A DNA stretch of 63,658 bases, counting the filler, from Octopus bimaculoides (Eukaryota): assembly GCF_001194135.2 (NCBI RefSeq). It is 4 parts of 3 records of this genome, joined end to end, with 100 filler letters (N's around TTAATTAATTAA, not from the genome) between each part and the next. Parts side by side here need not be neighbours in the genome. Positions count along the whole stretch, not along the records: positions 1 to 29,359 come from NC_068997.1; 3 more parts are not named here. The stretch is one strand, 5' to 3'. The notes under the pieces are model-generated. The model searched no databases and was not told the DNA's origin. It was given only the letters and a program-made list of their open reading frames with translations. Positions within the stretch are counted from its first letter, which is position 1. The number at the start of each line of letters is the position of its first letter. A program made the position numbers and the translations under genes. Positions 223 to 26,506 of this stretch are shown in pieces.

Positions 223-269
<47 letters not shown>

Positions 270-469
270 TTATGGAAATAATCTAATACATATACGTATT
301 TGTTGTGTGTTTGTGTGTGTGCGCGTGCGCAGTTAATATATTAAATCTGTACCAGGGTTTCATATATATATCAAGTAACATTCTGTTCTCCAGAGGTCAT
401 GAAGAAGAGGATCATATGTATTGTATCTTCTCGGTGTTAACCGAAGATGTCTGAATCGTATAACTATTC

Positions 470-521
<52 letters not shown>

Positions 522-2021
522 CCTACCTGTATGTCTGTCTAATCTACTTATATGTATATACGTGTGTATATATGTACTTCCATGCGTGCGTGTCTCTGTT
601 GTATTAACATGGCTGTCTAAATTTTCGTTGGTGGGGATCTTTATAAACAAGAATATAGACAAAGAGCACAATCTTCTTTAGCGCGTTTATTAGAATCTGT
701 TTCACACACACACACACGCGCGCGCGCGCTCGCGCTCGCGCTCACGCACACATACATTCTATATATATTTATATATACACGCAGACATTAATCAAAGTAT
801 ACAATATTATAGATCCATTATGGCCAATGTTACCAATCGGTTTCGCACTAGCTACTAAAACCAGACTTTTCATAACAGCACGGTTAAGTAATACCATCTT
901 CTCTTCAGAGATGGCAGCTATGATGAGCCTTCATATTGTAGCCATATCTGCCATTTCTGGAACGGGGCAGTCATCTTATATATATATGTGTGTGTGTGTG
1001 AGTATATATATGTGTATGCATACATACATATATGCATGTGTGTGTGAGCGTGCTTGCGTATATGTGTCTGTGTCTGTGTATACTCTCACACTTTCACACT
1101 TTCATACATATATACACATACTTGTCTATCTTTATCCATTTCGAAATGGTGTTGCGAATACCTTTTTTTATGCCAAATTAAGACGCACATTTCCCCTCAA
1201 AAATATCTTCCTGGGTCCTGTATGTAAATTTGAGCCTATATTACATACTTTAAGGCACTGAAAATCGTTTTACCCGAATATGCGCTGCTGAAATTGGAGT
1301 GCATCTAAGATGCCCGTACGTCTTTTATGCCATCAGATTATGCCATGGAATACCGTGTTGTCATGAGAGAGTATGGGTTTTTAATAAATTAATTCAATTC
1401 AATTTACTTGAAAATAATTTTAATAATTAAACAGAAATGCGAAGGAAAACAGCAAAATACATCTATGATATGTTTCACTCGTTATATTGCACTTTTACAT
1501 CATAGGAAGAAACCTCGTTATCAATTGGAAAAGCAGAAAAATTGTATACAACGAAGGCAAGCCCTCTTTGGTGGCATTAAAATGACCAGTTCAGAGTAGT
1601 GCAAATGGACGAACAGACAGAGCAATAGACAGAAACATCTCTCTTAGTGAAAAAAAACAAAAAAAAAACAACAAGAAGAAAAATCTATGGAAGGTACGTC
1701 TAAGAGTCAAGGGATTAAATGAAAACCGACTGTGAAGGAAACTGCGTGGAAAAGGTCAACCGTTTGTTTGCTGTGTCAGCAAGTTAGTGTGGCTGGGCGT
1801 TTGCAATGCCAGTTAGACGAGTTCGTTCATTATTGATTAACTGATTAATTCACTTCGCTATTATTTCTATTTATTCCTGACCAAAACTAAATGAAAGATG
1901 GCTGACATCAAAGGCAATGTTACCTTATTACCATAATTGTTATAGTTGTTGTTGTCGTTGTTCTTGCTGTTGTTGTTGTTGTTGTTGTCGTCGTCGTCGT
2001 CGTTGTTGTTGTTGCTGTTAT

Positions 2022-2216
2022 CGTTGTTTACTCCGGTGTCAGATCTGATCGTGTAAAAAGACCGATGATCAAAGACGTTCTTGCCGTGAACATCCAGTCT
2101 CTATAAATATCATGGATTACATTGTTCAAAGTCTTCTTTTATTTAAGACGATATGATGTGATTGGAGAATGATTTGTTAGCTATTTCTAGCAAATCGAGC
2201 AACCACATGAAGGCTA
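2022..2216 (-). mobile_element. SINE-like repeat, family E, diverged
   Basis: Shares tttgttagctatttctagc..tcgagc..accac with copies at 8762, 14160 and 60030; ends in a (GTT)n tail. Confidence 0.65.
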
Positions 2217-2234
2217 CAGCATTGACTCATTTTG

Positions 2235-2412
2235 GAAGGTAATGGATTGGCAGAATCGTTTGAGCATCTGACAATTGCCGTGCGGGGTTTGTTCCGACTC
2301 TTTACATTTTGAGTTCGGGTCTCGTCGAGGTCAGCTTTGCTTTTCATTCTTTCGGGATCGATGAATTTAAATACCAGAAATATACTGGGGACTAATAATT
2401 GATTGTTACCCA
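2235..2412 (+). mobile_element. SINE-A, old diverged copy
   Basis: tggcagaatcgtt head and gaggtcagctttgcttttcattctttcgggatcgat body match the SINE-A copies at 2907 and 26748. Confidence 0.75.
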
Positions 2413-2621
2413 CTCGTTGACTCACAGTGTTGTTATAAGAGAGTCATAATTAAATATCGTCGGAAGAAATAGTAGAGCACCGGGACTTAGTTACGCCTCT
2501 TTACGTCCTGAGTTCAAATTCAACAAGAAACAACTTTATCACTAATCCTTGAAGTACTACGTCCAGAAATCGGTTGAGGGAGGTAAGCGTCTTCCTTTAA
2601 AAATTTGTGGCCACGAGGCCA

Positions 2622-6235: not shown

Positions 6236-7699
6236 CATCAACATAGACAGGATCGAATCAGGATCGATAACGAAAAGCTTGTCATTTGCTGAAGTTACAA
6301 AAAAAGTTTCAGTCTATCGAACAAAAAATTAACAAAAAAAAACACCCCTCCCAAAGAAAAGTAAACAAAAAACAAAAACAAAAGAGAAACAAAAAAATCA
6401 GTATTTGGGACAAGCTAAGAAACACATCAACAGACTGGTAGAACAATTAGTCCTGATACTACCGCTGCTCCTACATCAAACAAACAACTAAACAGTGATA
6501 GATGCATATATATCGTTGAAGAGAATAGACTAGAGCGATTTTTCCTCTGAACAAGCTGAACTGTGTTTGAAAAGCATCTGAAGAGACAGACTTTATGATA
6601 AAATTTTCACCTGAAGATCTTTCCATTGACTACCTAGGATGCTGATATTTAAAATATTTCTCTCTGTTCTCATTGCAGAATGTGCCCACTTCTGGTTTGT
6701 TTTGTGGCCTTGCAGGATCATGAAAAGCTGTAAGTCCATGGTGATCTCAACCAACTGCATATCGTCAAAGTTTTTCCATTTGCCCTTATCGCCTGCCCAC
6801 ATTCTCTCACGACGGTGACTATAAGCTAGGGATCGACAATCATCACTAACGTCCCTAGCGGTGACCCTTATGTTCTCCCTTCTCAAATACTGTGAAACCA
6901 GTATGGGTTGGTGTCTCGTGTACTATTTGCGCTTGGGCTTTCGCATCCTCCTCCATGATACACATGGTACCAAATACCCTCCCTTTCTGATTGAAGAATA
7001 TTTCACCTAAAATATCAGAAAACGCGTTGGATCTTTTAGTAGATAGAAATACGCCACTGTACTTCTCTCACGGGCGTTTTGAGCTGATTGTGGAAATCTG
7101 GCCTAACTTCAGCGCACAAAATATTTACAAAATGTTTCTTTCAGAAAAAAAAAAAAAAAAATTCTATTAGAGTTTTCCTGTTGGACAAAATATTAGCAAA
7201 ATATATTTTATCGTTGTTCGTGTTTCCAACCGGTGCAACACGTGCAAACGTACTTTTATTGTTGCTGCAGACGATGGCACAATCTATACTCGGTTGAAAT
7301 GTTGAAATAAAATGATTGTTTTCTTTATGTCTGTGTATATTAATAATATTTTGAATGGTAATTTGATTATAAGACTTTTATTTTATTTTGTTTCCTGTGT
7401 ATGAGTTGTATTTTTTAAAATTATTTATTATTATTTTTTTTCTTATTTTCTTTTGGGGGCGTGGTTGAAATGTTTATAGCCATATTTATTTGTCACNNNN
7501 NNNNNNNNNNNNNNNNNNNNNNNNNNNNNNNNNNNNNNNNNNNNNNNNNNNNNNNNNNNNNNNNNNNNNNNNNNNNNNNNNNNNNNNNNNNNNNNNNNNN
7601 NNNNNNNNNNNNNNNNNNNNNNNNNNNNNNNNNNNNNNNNNNNNNNNNNNNNNNNNNNNNNNNNNNNNNNNNNNAAAACCCTCTCGCTTCGACTTCCTT

Positions 7700-9844: not shown

Positions 9845-11172
9845 NNNNNNNNNNNNNNNNNNNNNNNNNNNNNNNNNNNNNNNNNNNNNNNNNNNNNNNN
9901 NNNNNNNNNNNNNNNNNNNNNNNNNNNNNNNNNNNNNNNNNNNNNNNNNNNNNNNNNNNNNNNNNNNNNNNNNNNNNNNNNNNNNNNNNNNNNNNNNNNN
10001 NNNNNNNNNNNNNNNNNNNNNNNNNNNNNNNNNNNNNNNNNNNNNNNNNNNNNNNNNNNNNNNNNNNNNNNNNNNNNNNNNNNNNNNNNNNNNNNNNNNN
10101 NNNNNNNNNNNNNNNNNNNNNNNNNNNNNNNNNNNNNNNNNNNNNNNNNNNNNNNNNNNNNNNNNNNNNNNNNNNNNNNNNNNNNNNNNNNNNNNNNNNN
10201 NNNNNNNNNNNNNNNNNNNNNNNNNNNNNNNNNNNNNNNNNNNNNNNNNNNNNNNNNNNNNNNNNNNNNNNNNNNNNNNNNNNNNNNNNNNNNNNNNNNN
10301 NNNNNNNNNNNNNNNNNNNNNNNNNNNNNNNNNNNNNNNNNNNNNNNNNNNNNNNNNNNNNNNNNNNNNNNNNNNNNNNNNNNNNNNNNNNNNNNNNNNN
10401 NNNNNNNNNNNNNNNNNNNNNNNNNNNNNNNNNNNNNNNNNNNNNNNNNNNNNNNNNNNNNNNNNNNNNNNNNNNNNNNNNNNNNNNNNNNNNNNNNNNN
10501 NNNNNNNNNNNNNNNNNNNNNNNNNNNNNNNNNNNNNNNNNNNNNNNNNNNNNNNNNNNNNNNNNNNNNNNNNNAAAAAAAAAAAAAAAGTTTCAAATTT
10601 TACTCAGACATTTTGTTGTTTTCTCAAAGGAAATCGTATTTACGTTCTTTTTTCTCATTTTTAGTTTTCACGAATTTTAAAAAATTTTAGAAAATAAAAA
10701 AAAAATTTAGAAAATAAAAAATAAGATAAAAACTTAGTAAAAAAAAATACTTATTATTACACTGAAAATTATTTTTGTAATTAATCATAAACCAGAAAAA
10801 ATGGGTTACACTAATAACTATGCTTTTAACTCTCACTTTTCTCGTTCCCCCTCTCTATCTCTCATTTAGATTCTCTCCCTTTTATTTTCACTCTTCTATC
10901 GAATACATTTGACATTGAAATCCAATACTAAGTGAAAAGTGGTATCTTTTTGTCATTGAGATTTATATCTTCCCCAGAGTACGACAATTTATGGTAGTGT
11001 TTTTCTTTATATTTATTTAATTTCTTTATTTATTGCTTATAATAATTATTTGTCCGTTCTTCCCTATTCGATATCGTTATCCTCCGCCTCTTAGTGTGTG
11101 TATATATATATATATGTGTGTATAAATGTATGTGTTTATATATGTATATATATGTGTGTGTGTGTATATAGT

Positions 11173-11235
<63 letters not shown>

Positions 11236-11974
11236 NNNNNNNNNNNNNNNNNNNNNNNNNNNNNNNNNNNNNNNNNNNNNNNNNNNNNNNNNNNNNNNNN
11301 NNNNNNNNNNNNNNNNNNNNNNNNNNNNNNNNNNNNNNNNNNNNNNNNNNNNNNNNNNNNNNNNNNNNNNNNNNNNNNNNNNNNNNNNNNNNNNNNNNNN
11401 NNNNNNNNNNNNNNNNNNNNNNNNNNNNNNNNNNNNNNNNNNNNNNNNNNNNNNNNNNNNNNNNNNNNNNNNNNNNNNNNNNNNNNNNNNNNNNNNNNNN
11501 NNNNNNNNNNNNNNNNNNNNNNNNNNNNNNNNNNNNNNNNNNNNNNNNNNNNNNNNNNNNNNNNNNNNNNNNNNNNNNNNNNNNNNNNNNNNNNNNNNNN
11601 NNNNNNNNNNNNNNNNNNNNNNNNNNNNNNNNNNNNNNNNNNNNNNNNNNNNNNNNNNNNNNNNNNNNNNNNNNNNNNNNNNNNNNNNNNNNNNNNNNTA
11701 TATATATATATATACATATATATGTATGTATATAATACTAATGTATCCGTAATGCGTTTCGTCAGTCACCGTTTCGGTTTTTCCTATCGAAGTAATTTTC
11801 AGTACATTTCCACCATTTATTCCCCTGGGAAAATAATGGACGCCTGCAGCATCCCTTACTCTCTGCCTCATCACCCCATCATCCCATCGAATTCATACAG
11901 AATTAACGCTTAGTATAGTAAAGATAGGCTCATCTGAACCAACTTCGATTCCTAGTCATCATCATCATCATCAC

Positions 11975-12058
<84 letters not shown>

Positions 12059-12500
12059 NNNNNNNNNNNNNNNNNNNNNNNNNNNNNNNNNNNNNNNNNN
12101 NNNNNNNNNNNNNNNNNNNNNNNNNNNNNNNNNNNNNNNNNNNNNNNNNNNNNNNNNNNNNNNNNNNNNNNNNNNNNNNNNNNNNNNNNNNNNNNNNNNN
12201 NNNNNNNNNNNNNNNNNNNNNNNNNNNNNNNNNNNNNNNNNNNNNNNNNNNNNNNNNNNNNNNNNNNNNNNNNNNNNNNNNNNNNNNNNNNNNNNNNNNN
12301 NNNNNNNNNNNNNNNNNNNNNNNNNNNNNNNNNNNNNNNNNNNNNNNNNNNNNNNNNNNNNNNNNNNNNNNNNNNNNNNNNNNNNNNNNNNNNNNNNNNN
12401 NNNNNNNNNNNNNNNNNNNNNNNNNNNNNNNNNNNNNNNNNNNNNNNNNNNNNNNNNNNNNNNNNNNNNNNNNNTATATATATATATATATATATATATA

Positions 12501-15000: not shown

Positions 15001-15561
15001 ACCTAATATTCATCGTGGAGGAAGCCTTTTAATAATACACAAACCTATTAAATACCCTTTTTATTTAAATTTGATTCATGAGGCACCAAAGATTTCGTCA
15101 CACAGCTGCGACCTTGTCACTGACATAGTTCTGCTGCAACTCTGGTACTACGTTAGTGATCAATTCGCAGTTGTGTGATGAACTTTTGACAACTCATGTA
15201 ATAAATGTGAAGTGAGTTTAACGATTGAGTGTTAATAAATGACTCTTGACTATTCCGCAATGGAATTGCTCTAGTTTCAACACATGCACTCATATCAAGT
15301 CATTTGGCAAGAGCAGTATTAACACACGTCGGTTATATATATATATATATATNNNNNNNNNNNNNNNNNNNNNNNNNNNNNNNNNNNNNNNNNNNNNNNN
15401 NNNNNNNNNNNNNNNNNNNNNNNNNNNNNNNNNNNNNNNNNNNNNNNNNNNNNNNNNNNNNNNNNNNNNNNNNNNNNNNNNNNNNNNNNNNNNNNNNNNN
15501 NNNNNNTATATATATGTATATTCTGCGTTAAATGGAGAAGCGGCAACGAGTGAAAATTCTG

Positions 15562-16221: not shown

Positions 16222-16897
16222 AGTACATATATGTTATATATACTATAAAAATTCCGTGGCAGTTGTATCCCAATATGTATTTTTTTAATAATTTATCTTT
16301 TATCTTTTACTTATTTCAGCCATGTTGGCTGCCTGGCTGTAGTAAAATATAGACTAGAAGCACTAAGCAGCGAATTATGTAAATATAAACTCATTCGTAT
16401 TTTACTACGGCCGGGNNNNNNNNNNTATAAACTCATTCGTATTTTACTACGGCCGGGCAGCGAAATTTTTTTCCCACGAGAGTTCCGGACCCCAGTTATG
16501 AACTCATTTGCATACAGCAATCAGAGCTCAACTAATAAACTAGTGTCCACCTCGTCACAAAAATACTCCAAGTTCAGCTGAGTCTAGTGGCAATTGTGCG
16601 TTATAGCAAAATCGGACTGTTCTAAACGGGTTGATAGGGGTGACAAATGTGAAATTTAGTGTATAAAGTGAATGGAGAGCCAAATTCTAAGCAAGTCTTG
16701 CGGGTGCCGCCGATACACAAAGTTCCCAGTCTAATCGTTAAAGGCACAATACTGGGTATTAGTATTTTTGGTCAATAACTGATGAAGCATTAGGGTCTTT
16801 GTGTCTATCCGACGTGTACGCTTGGTAGTATTTAATGCATTTTTCATTCATGGAATAACTGAACGCCACGCATCCTCTGTGTGTGTGTGTGTGTGTG

Positions 16898-17527: not shown

Positions 17528-18853
17528 GTGTGTCTGTGTGTCTGTGAGTACGTGTGCGCGGGGGGGGGATGAGTGTGTGTGTTACGTGTGCGTGCGTGTG
17601 AGTATTACGTGTGTGTGCTTGTGTGTATGTGCAGTTGTAAATGGTTGGTGGTGCCGTATATTTGTCGCGATGTACATGATCCCAGATTTTATATCTTCGC
17701 ACTCTCATANNNNNNNNNNNNNNNNNNNNNNNNNNNNNNNNNNNNNNNNNNNNNNNNNNNNNNNNNNNNNNNNNNNNNNNNNNNNNNNNNNNNNNNNNNN
17801 NNNNNNNNNNNNNNNNNNNNNNNNNNNNNNNNNNNNNNNNNNNNNNNNNNNNNNNNNNNNNNNNNNNNNNNNNNNNNNNNNNNNNNNNNNNNNNNNNNNN
17901 NNNNNNNNNNNNNNNNNNNNNNNNNNNNNNNNNNNNNNNNNNNNNNNNNNNNNNNNNNNNNNNNNNNNNNNNNNNNNNNNNNNNNNNNNNNNNNNNNNNN
18001 NNNNNNNNNNNNNNNNNNNNNNNNNNNNNNNNNNNNNNNNNNNNNNNNNNNNNNNNNNNNNNNNNNNNNNNNNNNNNNNNNNNNNNNNNNNNNNNNNNNN
18101 NNNNNNNNNNNNNNNNNNNNNNNNNNNNNNNNNNNNNNNNNNNNNNNNNNNNNNNNNNNNNNNNNNNNNNNNNNNNNNNNNNNNNNNNNNNNNNNNNNNN
18201 NNNNNNNNNNNNNNNNNNNNNNNNNNNNNNNNNNNNNNNNNNNNNNNNNNNNNNNNNNNNNNNNNNNNNNNNNNNNNNNNNNNNNNNNNNNNNNNNNNNN
18301 NNNNNNNNNNNNNNNNNNNNNNNNNNNNNNNNNNNNNNNNNNNNNNNNNNNNNNNNNNNNNNNNNNNNNNNNNNNNNNNNNNNNNNNNNNNNNNNNNNNN
18401 NNNNNNNNNNNNNNNNNNNNNNNNNNNNNNNNNNNNNNNNNNNNNNNNNNNNNNNNNNNNNNNNNNNNNNNNNNNNNNNNNNNNNNNNNNNNNNNNCAGT
18501 GGCGTATATCCGGATCCCATTGGTGTGCTAAAGGAAATGGTATTACAACTTTCTTTTATTGATCATTGTGTACATGGCGTGATTGGTAAGGGTAGATGTT
18601 GGTTTCTTCTCATTGTATTCTCACTGTGTCCTTCGCTCTTTTCACCTATACTACCGTCTATGTACCTTACGTATTTTATATGGATGCTTCAATATTTCCT
18701 AGCTTCTCATACTGAACAAAATGTTCCTAGTTTTACTGTATAGTTTGAGCGTGATTGTGCACACTTTGCAGTTATTGTCGGTGTAGTTTTATTCTGTCTC
18801 AAATGAGTATGATCTATAAAATAGTTATTTAATGACCTATTAATTAGTTATTT

Positions 18854-24480: not shown

Positions 24481-24813
24481 ATGATGACGAGGACAACGAC
24501 GACCACAACAACGACAACAACAAAGTTGATGATGACGATTATGACGAAGAAGATGATAATGATGATGATGATGGTAAAGGTAATGATGATGACAGGTGTG
24601 ATGATAATTTCAGTAATCTTTCAAAGAAATTAATGCTATTAGTGATGATGGTGGCGGTGGTGCTAGTTATGACGACGACGACGACGACGATGGTGATGGT
24701 GATGGTGATGATGATGGTGAAAGTAAATAGTGGCGTTAGTTATAGTGGTGATGATGATGATGATTGTGTTGGTGGTGATGATAAAAACTAAGATGGTTGT
24801 GGTGGTAGTGATA

Positions 24814-24854
<41 letters not shown>

Positions 24855-24920
24855 AGTGGCGGTGCTGGTGACGATAGTGACGAGGAGCTTGAGGATGATG
24901 ATAACGATGACAACGAAGAT

Positions 24921-24983
<63 letters not shown>

Positions 24984-25098
24984 AACGGTGATGATGATGC
25001 ACGTGGAGGTTGTGCCTGGCGGTGATGATGACGATGGTGATGATGGCTGATCATGTGGTGATATTGATAAGGATATCAATAACAAAAAGAAAATAAGA

Positions 25099-25180
<82 letters not shown>
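24481..25180. repeat. Mosaic (GAT/GAC/GGT)n plus (AAT)n trinucleotide tract downstream of the Post1 stop
   Basis: Read directly; it gives spurious poly-H/T/S/Y ORFs. Confidence 0.95.
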
Positions 25181-25182
<2 letters not shown>

Positions 25183-25739
25183 CAATAAAACAATCAAAGT
25201 ACGAAAAAAGGACACAAATGTTTATATATTTTTTCCTTTTAAAATTTCTTTCTCTTTTTCTTTGTATTTATTATGGTTATTATTATTATTATTATTATTA
25301 TTATCATTATTATTATTATTATATTATTATCATTATTATTCATATTAATAATATTATCATAGTCATTTGTTCGTATTGTTTTTGTTGTTGTTACTGTTGT
25401 TGGAGGATAATGTTGTTTTTCGTTTTTTTTTTAAATTTTATAATTTTATTTTATTTTATTTTTATTTATTTATTTTTTTCAATTTCCGTCTGTCTCTGTT
25501 TTTTTTTTTTTCTGCCTCCTTTCATACATACTAACATAATCATTAACAACCAGCATTATTTTTTTTTTTATTCCTCCGCTCGTCATTTTTTTTGTTTTTT
25601 TTTCATTGACACCCTATCTCCCTTCCACTTTCTCTCTCCCTCCCTCCCTCCCTCGCTCTCTCTCTCTCTCTTTCTCTCTCACAACTTCTACATCACCAAA
25701 ATCATTGTGTTTATTAACCACACAGGATGTTATGTGACA

Positions 25740-26011
25740 TCAATTCGAAGATTGACCTTTTAAAGTCTCATCCCGTTTTTGCAACTTTTTCGCCTTTATT
25801 CGGCGATTCTGGAACCAAATTTTGATCTGTCGTTCACTTAAGTTAAGCAGTTGTGATAATTCCCAGCGGCGTGACTTTGAGATGTAGGTGGAGATAGCGT
25901 ACTCTCTTTCTAGCTCGGCGATTTGATACTTGGAATATGGTCTTCGGCGTTTCCGTAGAGCGATCGCTGACGGCGGCAGAGCTGACGGTAGATGGATTGC
26001 TTGTTGTAGAT
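25740..26011 (-). CDS. Post1: Posterior Hox gene Post1, terminal coding exon containing the whole homeodomain (homeobox 25958-25779); upstream coding exon(s) not located
   Basis: Minus strand reads the acceptor tctatttttcttcttgcag|AT, then [89 protein letters not shown] (TGA at 25742-25740). It has WFQNRR helix 3, an Abd-B-type N-terminal arm (RKRRRPYSK) and the [13 protein letters not shown] motif characteristic of spiralian Post1. The preceding intron is phase 1. Confidence 0.95.
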
Positions 26012-26506
26012 CTGCAAGAAGAAAAATAGATAAATAAATAAATCAATCAATGACTGAATAAATAAAGTGAATAAGTTATAATAGTAATATTAATGATTAT
26101 GATGATGAGAAGATTTATAATAATAATTATTATATTAACAACACCAATAATAATAACAATAATAATAAGGTTTCTTTTATTGTCCCAAGGCGCTTTTTAT
26201 AAACAATTCCTGGTAACAGGGGCCTCAGTATTTATTTCAATCGGTTATGGAAAATAAGCTTGAAGAAAAACAACATACATTCTCTAAGAGAAAGTCACGA
26301 AAGCACAATGAAGAAAACTCAAAGACCTCGAATAACTATGACTACCAAGTGCTAGCACATTCTTACACTGATTTCCTGCTTATGATAATGATGACGATAG
26401 TAACAACATCAACAACGAATAATAATGATTCCTTTTGCTGACCACACGAATCCAAAATGTCGAGAACAGTACAAAAATTAAATAAGTATTGGGCAAGAAA
26501 CAGTGG

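What the first reader, a model, noticed from the sequence alone, without database searches (positions are those of the whole stretch)
25740..26011. Post1 homeobox exon invisible to the ORF track
Seen: an intact 60-aa homeodomain behind a strong AG acceptor, 2 nt + 90 codons with no internal stop. The track reports only the overlapping wrong frame (25843-26046). Established: [13 protein letters not shown] marks spiralian Post1. Seen: atypical residues (A21-I22-S23-T24 in place of the common LFN-type loop, I54 in place of M54) and no Trp among the 17 complete codons between the acceptor and the homeodomain, whereas many Abd-B-class proteins carry a Trp just upstream. Inference: altered cofactor contact or DNA preference.
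Basis: partly seen in the sequence, partly recalled or inferred. Interest (0 to 1): 0.75.

Follow-up and report, generated by a model that had tools for sequence, protein, structure and literature searches.

The report
Octopus Post1 Hox homeobox exon
This is the last exon, carrying the homeodomain, of the posterior Hox gene Post1 in an octopus genome; it is intact, strongly conserved and already annotated in a sister species, so it is an ordinary known gene.

Summary
On the minus strand an AG acceptor (26013-26012) is followed by 2 nt, 89 sense codons and TGA (26011..25740), encoding a complete homeodomain (Pfam E = 7.7e-21). The bacterial-style ORF list misses it only because the frame has no start codon.

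The Post1 call is supported. The homeodomain is 53-57/60 identical to named molluscan Post1, against 32-34/60 to Post2, 35-41/60 to Abd-B and 31-32/60 to Cdx. In an NJ bootstrap it sits inside conchiferan Post1 in 149/150 replicates and never groups with Post2. The whole exon product is 100% identical to an Octopus vulgaris protein model that splices at the same site. The exon is under strong purifying selection (pN 0.04, pS 0.94 against another cephalopod).

The "atypical residue" inference is not supported as something special here. I54 is in every molluscan Post1 compared, and S23 and T24 in nearly every conchiferan one. No molluscan Post1 compared has a Trp in the linker; they share an invariant Trp 47 residues upstream of the homeodomain, in exon 1. 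Only Y11, I22 and L38 differ from a gastropod Post1.

Exon 1 is not in the window; the O. vulgaris model spans 404 kb. This is a known gene of low interest.

The parts
26012..26035 (-). 3' splice site: pyrimidine-rich tract (tttatctatttttcttcttgc) ending in the AG acceptor at 26013-26012
   Evidence: Read directly. 17 of the 20 bases just before the final CAG are pyrimidines. The tract ...TTTTTCTTCTTGCAG is identical in O. sinensis. The O. vulgaris model P0139 and the transcript contig L002 join exon 1 at this position.
25740..26011 (-). Terminal coding exon of Post1: 2 nt completing a split Asp codon (phase-1 intron), 89 codons and TGA
   Evidence: Translation. 100% protein identity to O. vulgaris P0139. 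96-100% DNA identity to O. sinensis inside the exon, against 70-90% in most flanking 50-nt windows. pN 0.039 and pS 0.937 against cephalopod L002.
25959..26009 (-). 17-residue linker [17 protein letters not shown] containing the IHLPS motif; it has no Trp
   Evidence: I91-H92-L93-P94-S95 are invariant in 14 conchiferan Post1 proteins. None of them has a Trp between the junction and the homeodomain.
25779..25958 (-). 60-residue homeodomain, [60 protein letters not shown]
   Evidence: Pfam PF00046, E = 7.7e-21. Best solved relatives are Abd-B 5ZJQ (3e-21) and HoxA9 1PUF (1.4e-20). 53-57/60 identical to named Post1.
25740..25778 (-). Short C-terminal tail [12 protein letters not shown] and the TGA stop (25742-25740)
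   Evidence: The tail is identical in O. vulgaris P0139 and in the in-frame end of O. sinensis P0068.
25710..25715 (-). AATAAA hexamer 25 nt after the stop codon; a candidate polyadenylation signal (inference only)
   Evidence: Read directly. It is identical in O. sinensis. No transcript end was mapped.

Best explanation
Window 26011..25740 (minus strand) is the last exon of the octopus orthologue of the spiralian posterior Hox gene Post1. It is spliced through a phase-1 intron to an upstream exon that lies outside the window. Together they encode a sequence-specific DNA-binding transcription factor. In this exon the protein consists of a short linker with the family-invariant IHLPS motif, a posterior-class homeodomain and a 12-residue tail. 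Shown: the exon anatomy, the homeodomain, the orthology, the conservation and use of the acceptor in relatives, and purifying selection. Inferred: that the protein binds DNA like other posterior Hox proteins, through the N-terminal arm and helix 3. W48, F49, Q50, N51 and R53 are all retained. Also inferred: that it acts in posterior or lineage-specific patterning. The window comes from an Octopus species about 10% diverged in non-coding DNA from O. sinensis. Octopus bimaculoides is a plausible source, but that is inference.
For: The exon and its translation are; the Pfam homeodomain match is E = 7.7e-21. The closest solved structures are Abd-B, HoxA9 and HoxC9, followed by Hox13; CDX-2 reaches only about 5e-13. 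Proteins named Post1 by their sources are 76-84% identical over the exon product: Antalis entalis, Nucula tumidula and Steromphala varia. Homeodomain identity is 53-57/60 to Post1, 32-34/60 to Post2, 35-41/60 to Abd-B and 31-32/60 to Cdx. The NJ bootstrap gives 149/150 for conchiferan Post1 including the window, and 0/150 for window plus Post2 (reference homeodomains from the supplement of PMC12328838). O. vulgaris P0139 is 100% identical and has the junction FCQR|DLQQ. L002 is a spliced transcript contig with the same exon-1 motif and the same junction base. pN/pS is about 0.04. The exon is 96-100% identical to O. sinensis, against 70-90% in most flanking 50-nt windows.
Against: No transcript data from the window's own species were available, so use of the acceptor at 26011 is inferred from relatives. 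Exon 1 and the promoter are not in the window: tblastn was negative, and the O. vulgaris model spans 404 kb. The O. sinensis copy carries two 1-nt deletions in the assembly. They look like assembly errors, but they could be real. The NJ tree uses only 60 columns. Deeper nodes are weak: all Post1 including Capitella forms a clade in 62/150 replicates, and molluscan Post1 in 77/150.
Confidence: 0.95

Rival explanations
1. The exon encodes a lineage-modified Post1 whose unusual residues (A21-I22-S23-T24, I54, no proximal Trp) change DNA preference or cofactor contact in octopus.
For: The residues are really there. They do differ from Abd-B and Hox9, which have L21-F22-N23 and M54. Tardigrade Abd-B (P0153) and a Hox9-like protein (P0020) do carry a Trp 6-7 residues before the homeodomain.
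Against: I54 is shared by every molluscan Post1 compared and by Capitella Post1. S23-T24 are shared by nearly every conchiferan Post1 compared, and A21 by gastropods and Antalis. Only Y11, I22 and L38 differ from Lissachatina fulica Post1b, and only I22 differs from another cephalopod. The Trp-free linker is family-wide, and all 14 conchiferan Post1 sequences aligned share an invariant distal Trp. PMC6962438 states that no significant modifications were seen in cephalopod Post1 homeodomains.
Confidence: 0.04
2. The exon is a decaying or non-functional homeobox relic: a pseudogene, or an orphan exon left behind when the cephalopod Hox cluster was dispersed.
For: No upstream exon is present in the window. 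The O. sinensis assembly shows two frameshifting deletions. [quoted passage not shown]
Against: The frame is intact. pN 0.039 against a saturated pS of 0.937 over a deep cephalopod divergence indicates strong selection. The acceptor is conserved. There is a spliced transcript contig in another cephalopod (L002) and a spliced gene model in O. vulgaris. Between the window and O. sinensis the exon has only one substitution, and it is synonymous (TAT/TAC); the deletions sit in short repeated-base contexts.
Confidence: 0.03
3. It belongs to another posterior or ParaHox class: Post2, Abd-B/Hox9-13-like, or Cdx.
For: Automatic annotations call the orthologues 'Hox-D9-like', 'Hox-D11-like', 'hox-c11' or 'Hox-A9-like'. 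The best solved-structure match is Abd-B.
Against: Those names are nearest-vertebrate labels. Identity is 32-34/60 to Post2, 33-36/60 to Hox9/10, 34/60 to a Hox13-like protein and 31-32/60 to Cdx, against 53-57/60 to named Post1. The window groups with Post2 in 0/150 bootstrap replicates.
Confidence: 0.01

Closest known systems
Octopus vulgaris 'Hox-D9-like isoform X1' (P0139, 175 aa, assembly GCA_951406725.2)
   Same: 100% identical over all 89 residues encoded here. Same exon junction (FCQR|DLQQ), same stop.
   Different: It comes from another species; the window's non-coding DNA is only about 87-93% identical to the sister species O. sinensis. That model adds an exon 1, which is not in the window, and spans 404 kb. 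It carries an automatic vertebrate-style name, not Post1.
Molluscan Post1: Antalis entalis (P0134), Nucula tumidula (P0133), Steromphala varia (P0137), and Lottia, Crassostrea and Lissachatina homeodomains in the supplement of PMC12328838
   Same: 53-57/60 homeodomain identity. Shared [31 protein letters not shown] (I54), the IHLPS linker and the intron position. Same clade in 149/150 replicates.
   Different: Octopus has Y11 (F in other conchiferans; Y in the chiton and Lingula), I22 and L38 (I elsewhere). Its C-tail is very short. The O. vulgaris model also lacks the N-terminal ~90 residues (MNPYAFRGWHLP...DWKLQ) found in the others.
Spiralian Post2
   Same: Also a posterior-class Hox homeodomain, with the RKKRKPY arm and KRWE in helix 2.
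   Different: Post2 has YQTMVLENEF, ITRQKRWEISCKL and VKVWFQNRRMKRKK. It is only 32-34/60 identical and forms a separate clade in 150/150 replicates.
Drosophila Abdominal-B (PDB 5ZJQ) and human HoxA9 (PDB 1PUF)
   Same: Best solved relatives (E = 3e-21 and 1.4e-20). Shared posterior arm KPY(S/T)K, SK..RWEL (Abd-B) and helix 3 KIWFQNRR.
   Different: They have L21-F22-N23 and M54. Related Abd-B/Hox9-type proteins carry a Trp 6-7 residues before the homeodomain (P0153, P0020). Post1 has none there.
Vertebrate Hox13 (HoxA13, PDB 2LD5)
   Same: Shares ELEREYA (Y20, A21), NLSERQ, and a beta-branched aliphatic residue at position 54: V in Hox13, I in Post1.
   Different: A Hox13-like homeodomain (P0136) is only 34/60 identical, and helix 2 differs (KRRRISATT). 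Hox13 has T46 rather than K46. It does not group with the molluscan Post1 clade that contains the window.

Membership tests
Spiralian Post1 (posterior Hox) | Complete 60-residue homeodomain | tested here: met
   Pfam PF00046, E = 7.7e-21, model positions 1-57 of 57.
Spiralian Post1 (posterior Hox) | Posterior-class N-terminal arm (basic run followed by P7-Y8-S/T9-K10) | tested here: met
   The window has [10 protein letters not shown]. The best PDB relatives are Abd-B, HoxA9 and HoxC9.
Spiralian Post1 (posterior Hox) | Post1-type residues shared with named Post1: [31 protein letters not shown] | tested here: met
   53-57/60 identity to homeodomains labelled Post1 in the database and in the supplement of PMC12328838.
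Spiralian Post1 (posterior Hox) | Groups with named Post1, and not with Post2, Abd-B, Hox9-13 or Cdx, in a tree | tested here: met
   NJ with BLOSUM62 distances and 150 bootstraps: conchiferan Post1 plus window 149/150; window with Post2 0/150. The tree rests on 60 columns, and deeper Post1 nodes are weak (62-107/150).
Spiralian Post1 (posterior Hox) | Family motifs outside the homeodomain: the IHLPS linker, and in exon 1 SCCxxSCSC and N-S/T-W-R | tested here: inconclusive
   IHLPS is present in the window. The exon-1 motifs are present in the identical O. vulgaris protein and in L002. Exon 1 itself is not in the window.
Spiralian Post1 (posterior Hox) | Genomic position at the posterior end of, or split from, the Hox cluster | not testable with these tools
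   The window holds no other recognisable gene.
Spiralian Post1 (posterior Hox) | The exon is transcribed and spliced at 26011 in this species | not testable with these tools
   Only indirect evidence is available: the O. vulgaris model and the cephalopod transcript contig L002 use the homologous site.
Spiralian Post2 | YQTMVLENEF / ITRQKRWEISCKL / VKVWFQNRRMKRKK signature | tested here: not met
   32-34/60 identity; never grouped with Post2.
Abd-B / Hox9-10 type | Trp a few residues upstream of the homeodomain; L21-F22-N23 and M54 | tested here: not met
   There is no Trp in the 17-residue linker, and the residues are A21-I22-S23 and I54. The comparators P0153 and P0020 do have the proximal Trp.
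Cdx (ParaHox) | KDKYRVVYTD arm and RRAKERK in helix 3 | tested here: not met
   31-32/60 identity. CDX-2 in the PDB scores E about 5e-13, against 3e-21 for Abd-B.

The most novel reading that the evidence does not exclude
Two readings are not excluded. (1) Molluscan Post1, octopus included, may have replaced the homeodomain-proximal Trp cofactor motif with a distal invariant Trp (N-S/T-W-R, 47 residues upstream) next to a Cys-rich SCCxxSCSC motif. Combined with Y20-A21 and a beta-branched residue at 54, as in vertebrate Hox13, this could give the whole family a Hox13-like, Pbx-independent binding mode. (2) Octopod Post1 may have lost the ~90-residue N-terminal region that is conserved in other conchiferans. 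Neither reading is specific to this window.
Probability: 0.2. Interest if true: 0.35.

Novelty: already known. Interest (0 to 1): 0.1.

Why it matters
It matters little beyond correct annotation. Post1 is a known member of the cephalopod Hox set. PMC6962438 compared cephalopod Post1 homeodomains with those of other molluscs and reported no significant modification. A sister species carries an identical annotated protein.

Three small points are of practical use. First, the exon is intact in this octopus. Second, the frameshifted O. sinensis model ('Hox-D11-like') probably reflects two single-base assembly errors. Third, octopod Post1 expression has not been described: PMC10509229 could not study it. 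A verified exon sequence and junction would help with probe or primer design.

Tried and rejected
- Exon 1 search. tblastn with the L002 upstream peptide, which contains the conserved exon-1 motif, found nothing in the window or in the O. sinensis locus. The first exon of the O. sinensis model lies in a ~1.7 kb segment that has no counterpart in the window, so it is probably spurious.
- Third homolog search. It returned only vertebrate Hox9/10/8 and Abd-B, and no named Post2. The bait was wrong. Real Post2 homeodomains were later taken from the supplement of PMC12328838.
- Full-text search for Post1 peptide strings: 0 papers.
- Supplements of PMC10675955, PMC5103448 and PMC7878502 held no sequences.
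- PMC4795812, the id I tried from memory for the octopus genome paper, is not held.
- Other features in the window: Rfam gave 0 hits, tRNA search 0, and Pfam nothing on seven non-repetitive ORFs. There is no second homeobox.
- blastn of L002 against the window found no nucleotide match because synonymous sites are saturated.
- The first bootstrap script timed out. It was rerun with 150 replicates.
- The reference homeodomains from the PDF supplement carry machine-reading errors: O for Q, QNNRMK or QNRMRK for QNRRMK, RNTF for RTNF in Hox1, a dropped Y in Lox4 and an extra E in Antp. I corrected these by hand before building the tree. The corrections touch only near-invariant homeodomain positions, not the class-diagnostic residues.
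- No structure prediction was run. It would not discriminate between the hypotheses.

Full report
**What is there**

On the minus strand the sequence reads ...tttatctatttttcttcttgcag|AT CTA CAA CAA GCA.... The AG acceptor is at 26013-26012, and 17 of the 20 bases just before the final CAG are pyrimidines. From 26011 there are 2 nt, 89 sense codons and TGA at 25742-25740.

The product is [89 protein letters not shown]. Pfam Homeodomain matches it at E = 7.7e-21 over the whole model.

In standard numbering the homeodomain is 25958..25779, beginning L1-R2-K3.

The ORF list shows only the two overlapping wrong frames. The list requires a start codon, and a spliced exon has none; that is the whole reason the exon is "invisible". 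A six-frame scan with a homeodomain HMM finds this one homeobox in the window and nothing else.

**Whose genome**

A frameshifted "Hox-D11-like" model from Octopus sinensis (P0068) shares the C-terminal 34 residues exactly. Its N-terminal part matches the two wrong frames of this exon.

The O. sinensis contig (L001) aligns to window 19.8-29.4 kb at 84-93% identity. Inside the exon it differs by one synonymous substitution and two 1-nt deletions. Exon windows are 96-100% identical, against 70-90% in most flanking 50-nt windows.

The window is therefore from an Octopus species other than O. sinensis or O. vulgaris. It has seven N gaps and 36% G+C, typical of a short-read cephalopod scaffold. O. 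bimaculoides is plausible, but that is inference.

**Orthology**

A profile search returned proteins that their sources name Post1: Antalis entalis "hox posterior 1", Nucula tumidula "posterior hox 1" and Steromphala varia "posterior homeobox protein 1". They are 76-84% identical over the exon product. The same search returned an O. vulgaris protein, "Hox-D9-like isoform X1" (P0139), at 100% identity and 100% coverage.

Labelled Post1, Post2, Lox2, Lox4, Antp and Hox1 homeodomains came from the supplement of PMC12328838. I corrected obvious machine-reading errors in them by hand.

| Reference class | Identity to the window homeodomain |
|---|---|
| Conchiferan Post1 | 53-57/60 |
| Chiton Post1-like (Liolophura) and solenogaster Post1 | 49 and 46/60 |
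| Brachiopod Post1 / Post1-like (Terebratalia, Lingula) | 43-45/60 |
| Abd-B | 35-41/60 |
| Post2 | 32-34/60 |
| Hox9/10 | 33-36/60 |
| Hox13-like | 34/60 |
| Cdx | 31-32/60 |

In an NJ bootstrap the window falls inside conchiferan Post1 in 149/150 replicates. It groups with Post2 in 0/150, and Post2 itself is monophyletic in 150/150. Against solved structures the best matches are Abd-B (3e-21) and HoxA9 (1.4e-20), while CDX-2 reaches only about 5e-13.

**Is the acceptor used?**

No reads from this species could be examined, but two independent relatives bear on the question.

- The O. vulgaris model joins ...SYQSFCQR to DLQQAIH..., with the Asp codon split G|AT. That is exactly the AG|AT junction at 26011.
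- A Logan contig from another cephalopod (L002) has an open frame running upstream of DLQQAIH. That frame holds KDDSQRSCCVLSCSCNNQQRINNYDTPWRGAD, the same exon-1 motif as in O. vulgaris. There is no AG at the junction base. It is therefore spliced RNA joined at the homologous position.

Gastropod and bivalve genomic ORFs all begin D/E-(M/V/I)-Q-Q/N, as expected if they share the same phase-1 intron.

Between the window and L002, synonymous sites are saturated (pS 0.94) while pN is 0.039. The exon has therefore been under strong purifying selection across a deep cephalopod split.

**Where is the rest of the gene?**

The exon-1 motif is absent from the window and from 6.6 kb upstream in O. sinensis. 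The O. vulgaris gene model spans 404 kb. The window thus holds only the terminal exon, 3.3 kb of the preceding intron and 25.7 kb of downstream sequence.

Nothing else was recognised in the window: Rfam gave 0 hits, the tRNA search 0, and Pfam nothing on the non-repetitive ORFs.

**The "atypical residues"**

Relative to Abd-B, Hox9 or Antp they are atypical. Relative to Post1 they are the rule.

- Every molluscan Post1 homeodomain retrieved has I54 in RRIKAKK or RRIKEKK, and so does Capitella Post1.
- Nearly every conchiferan Post1 has S23-T24 within [15 protein letters not shown].
- A21 occurs in gastropods and Antalis.
- The octopus differs from Lissachatina fulica Post1b at only three positions: Y11, I22 and L38. 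It differs from the other cephalopod at one (I22 against L22).
- Y11 is also found in the chiton and in Lingula.
- Y20-A21 and a beta-branched residue at 54 also occur in vertebrate HoxA13, which has ELEREYA and V54.

**The missing Trp**

Tardigrade Abd-B has LDWTSQVT|MRKKR, and a Hox9-like protein has SNWLHAKS|TRKKR.

None of the 14 aligned conchiferan Post1 proteins has a Trp in this linker. Instead all share an invariant Trp in exon 1, 47 residues before the homeodomain. The motif is RLNVLDNSWR in most and RINNYDTPWRG in cephalopods, and it sits beside invariant Cys residues (SCCxxSCSC). The linker motif IHLPS is also invariant.

The Trp-free linker is therefore an old family trait. Whether the distal Trp contacts Pbx/Exd is unknown and was not tested.

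**Literature**

- PMC6962438 reports that in the O. bimaculoides assembly no scaffold holds more than one Hox gene. It also compared cephalopod homeodomains with those of other molluscs and observed "no significant modifications" in Post1, among others.
- PMC9635652 places Post1 on the Argonauta Hox scaffolds.
- PMC10509229 could not study Post1 expression in O. vulgaris.

The gene is known; its expression in octopods is not described.

**Verdict**

The functional inference is not supported as a property of this locus. This is an ordinary, already known gene, correctly spotted by eye.

Noticed in passing
L001 (O. sinensis VCDQ01003177.1) about 8012 and 8112, homologous to window about 25957 and 25856: The O. 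sinensis assembly has two single-base deletions inside the Post1 exon. The database model 'Hox-D11-like' (P0068) therefore reads two wrong frames before returning to the true frame. Its first exon (L001 6590-6682) lies in a ~1.7 kb segment with no counterpart in the window. These are probably assembly errors plus a spurious exon.
   Followed up: partly
L002 (Logan SRR25158152 contig), 234-2129 minus strand and 2076-2573 plus strand: The contig joins a spliced Post1 transcript to the antisense of a 631-aa tyrosinase ORF. The first 18 codons of the called tyrosinase ORF are antisense to Post1 exon-1 coding sequence. It is most likely a chimeric assembly of two transcripts; the species is unknown.
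   Followed up: partly
L002 2241-2297: Between the exon-1 end (FCQR) and DLQQ this transcript carries 57 extra in-frame bases that begin with GT (GGGTNMQNRYNSMSLHDLI). That is what use of a downstream alternative 5' splice site would give. The extra bases are absent from the O. vulgaris model and from the other molluscs.
   Followed up: no
P0139 (O. vulgaris) compared with other molluscan Post1 proteins, alignment A2: The octopus model starts at the KSGYESLLYK-type motif. It lacks the ~90 N-terminal residues (MNPYAFRGWHLP...DWKLQ) that are conserved in bivalves, gastropods and a scaphopod. Either the model is incomplete or cephalopods have lost this region.
   Followed up: no
O. vulgaris gene model for P0139 (GCA_951406725.2): The gene range is 403,695 bp for a 175-aa product, so at least one intron is hundreds of kilobases long. 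This fits the stretched cephalopod Hox regions described in the literature.
   Followed up: no
window 25620-25695, minus strand: A GA-rich polypurine tract (gagagagaaagagagagagagagagcgagggagggagggagggagagagaaag) starts about 50 nt after the stop codon and is 82-96% conserved with O. sinensis. Further 3'-flank blocks at 25145-25244 and 25345-25394 are 98-100% identical to O. sinensis.
   Followed up: no
window 24663-25763 and 26040-26260: The exon (44.9% G+C) is embedded in very A+T-rich, low-complexity DNA; the 500-nt flanks are 27.7% G+C. Long ATT/ATA-type runs there produce the poly-I, poly-Y and poly-M pseudo-ORFs in the ORF list.
   Followed up: no
window 7497-7674, 9845-10574, 11236-11698, 12059-12474, 15353-15506, 16416-16425, 17710-18496: There are seven runs of N (assembly gaps), mostly bordered by (TA)n or (TATG)n-type microsatellites. 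The very low G+C values in the composition profile at 10-13 kb and 17-19 kb are artefacts of these gaps.
   Followed up: yes
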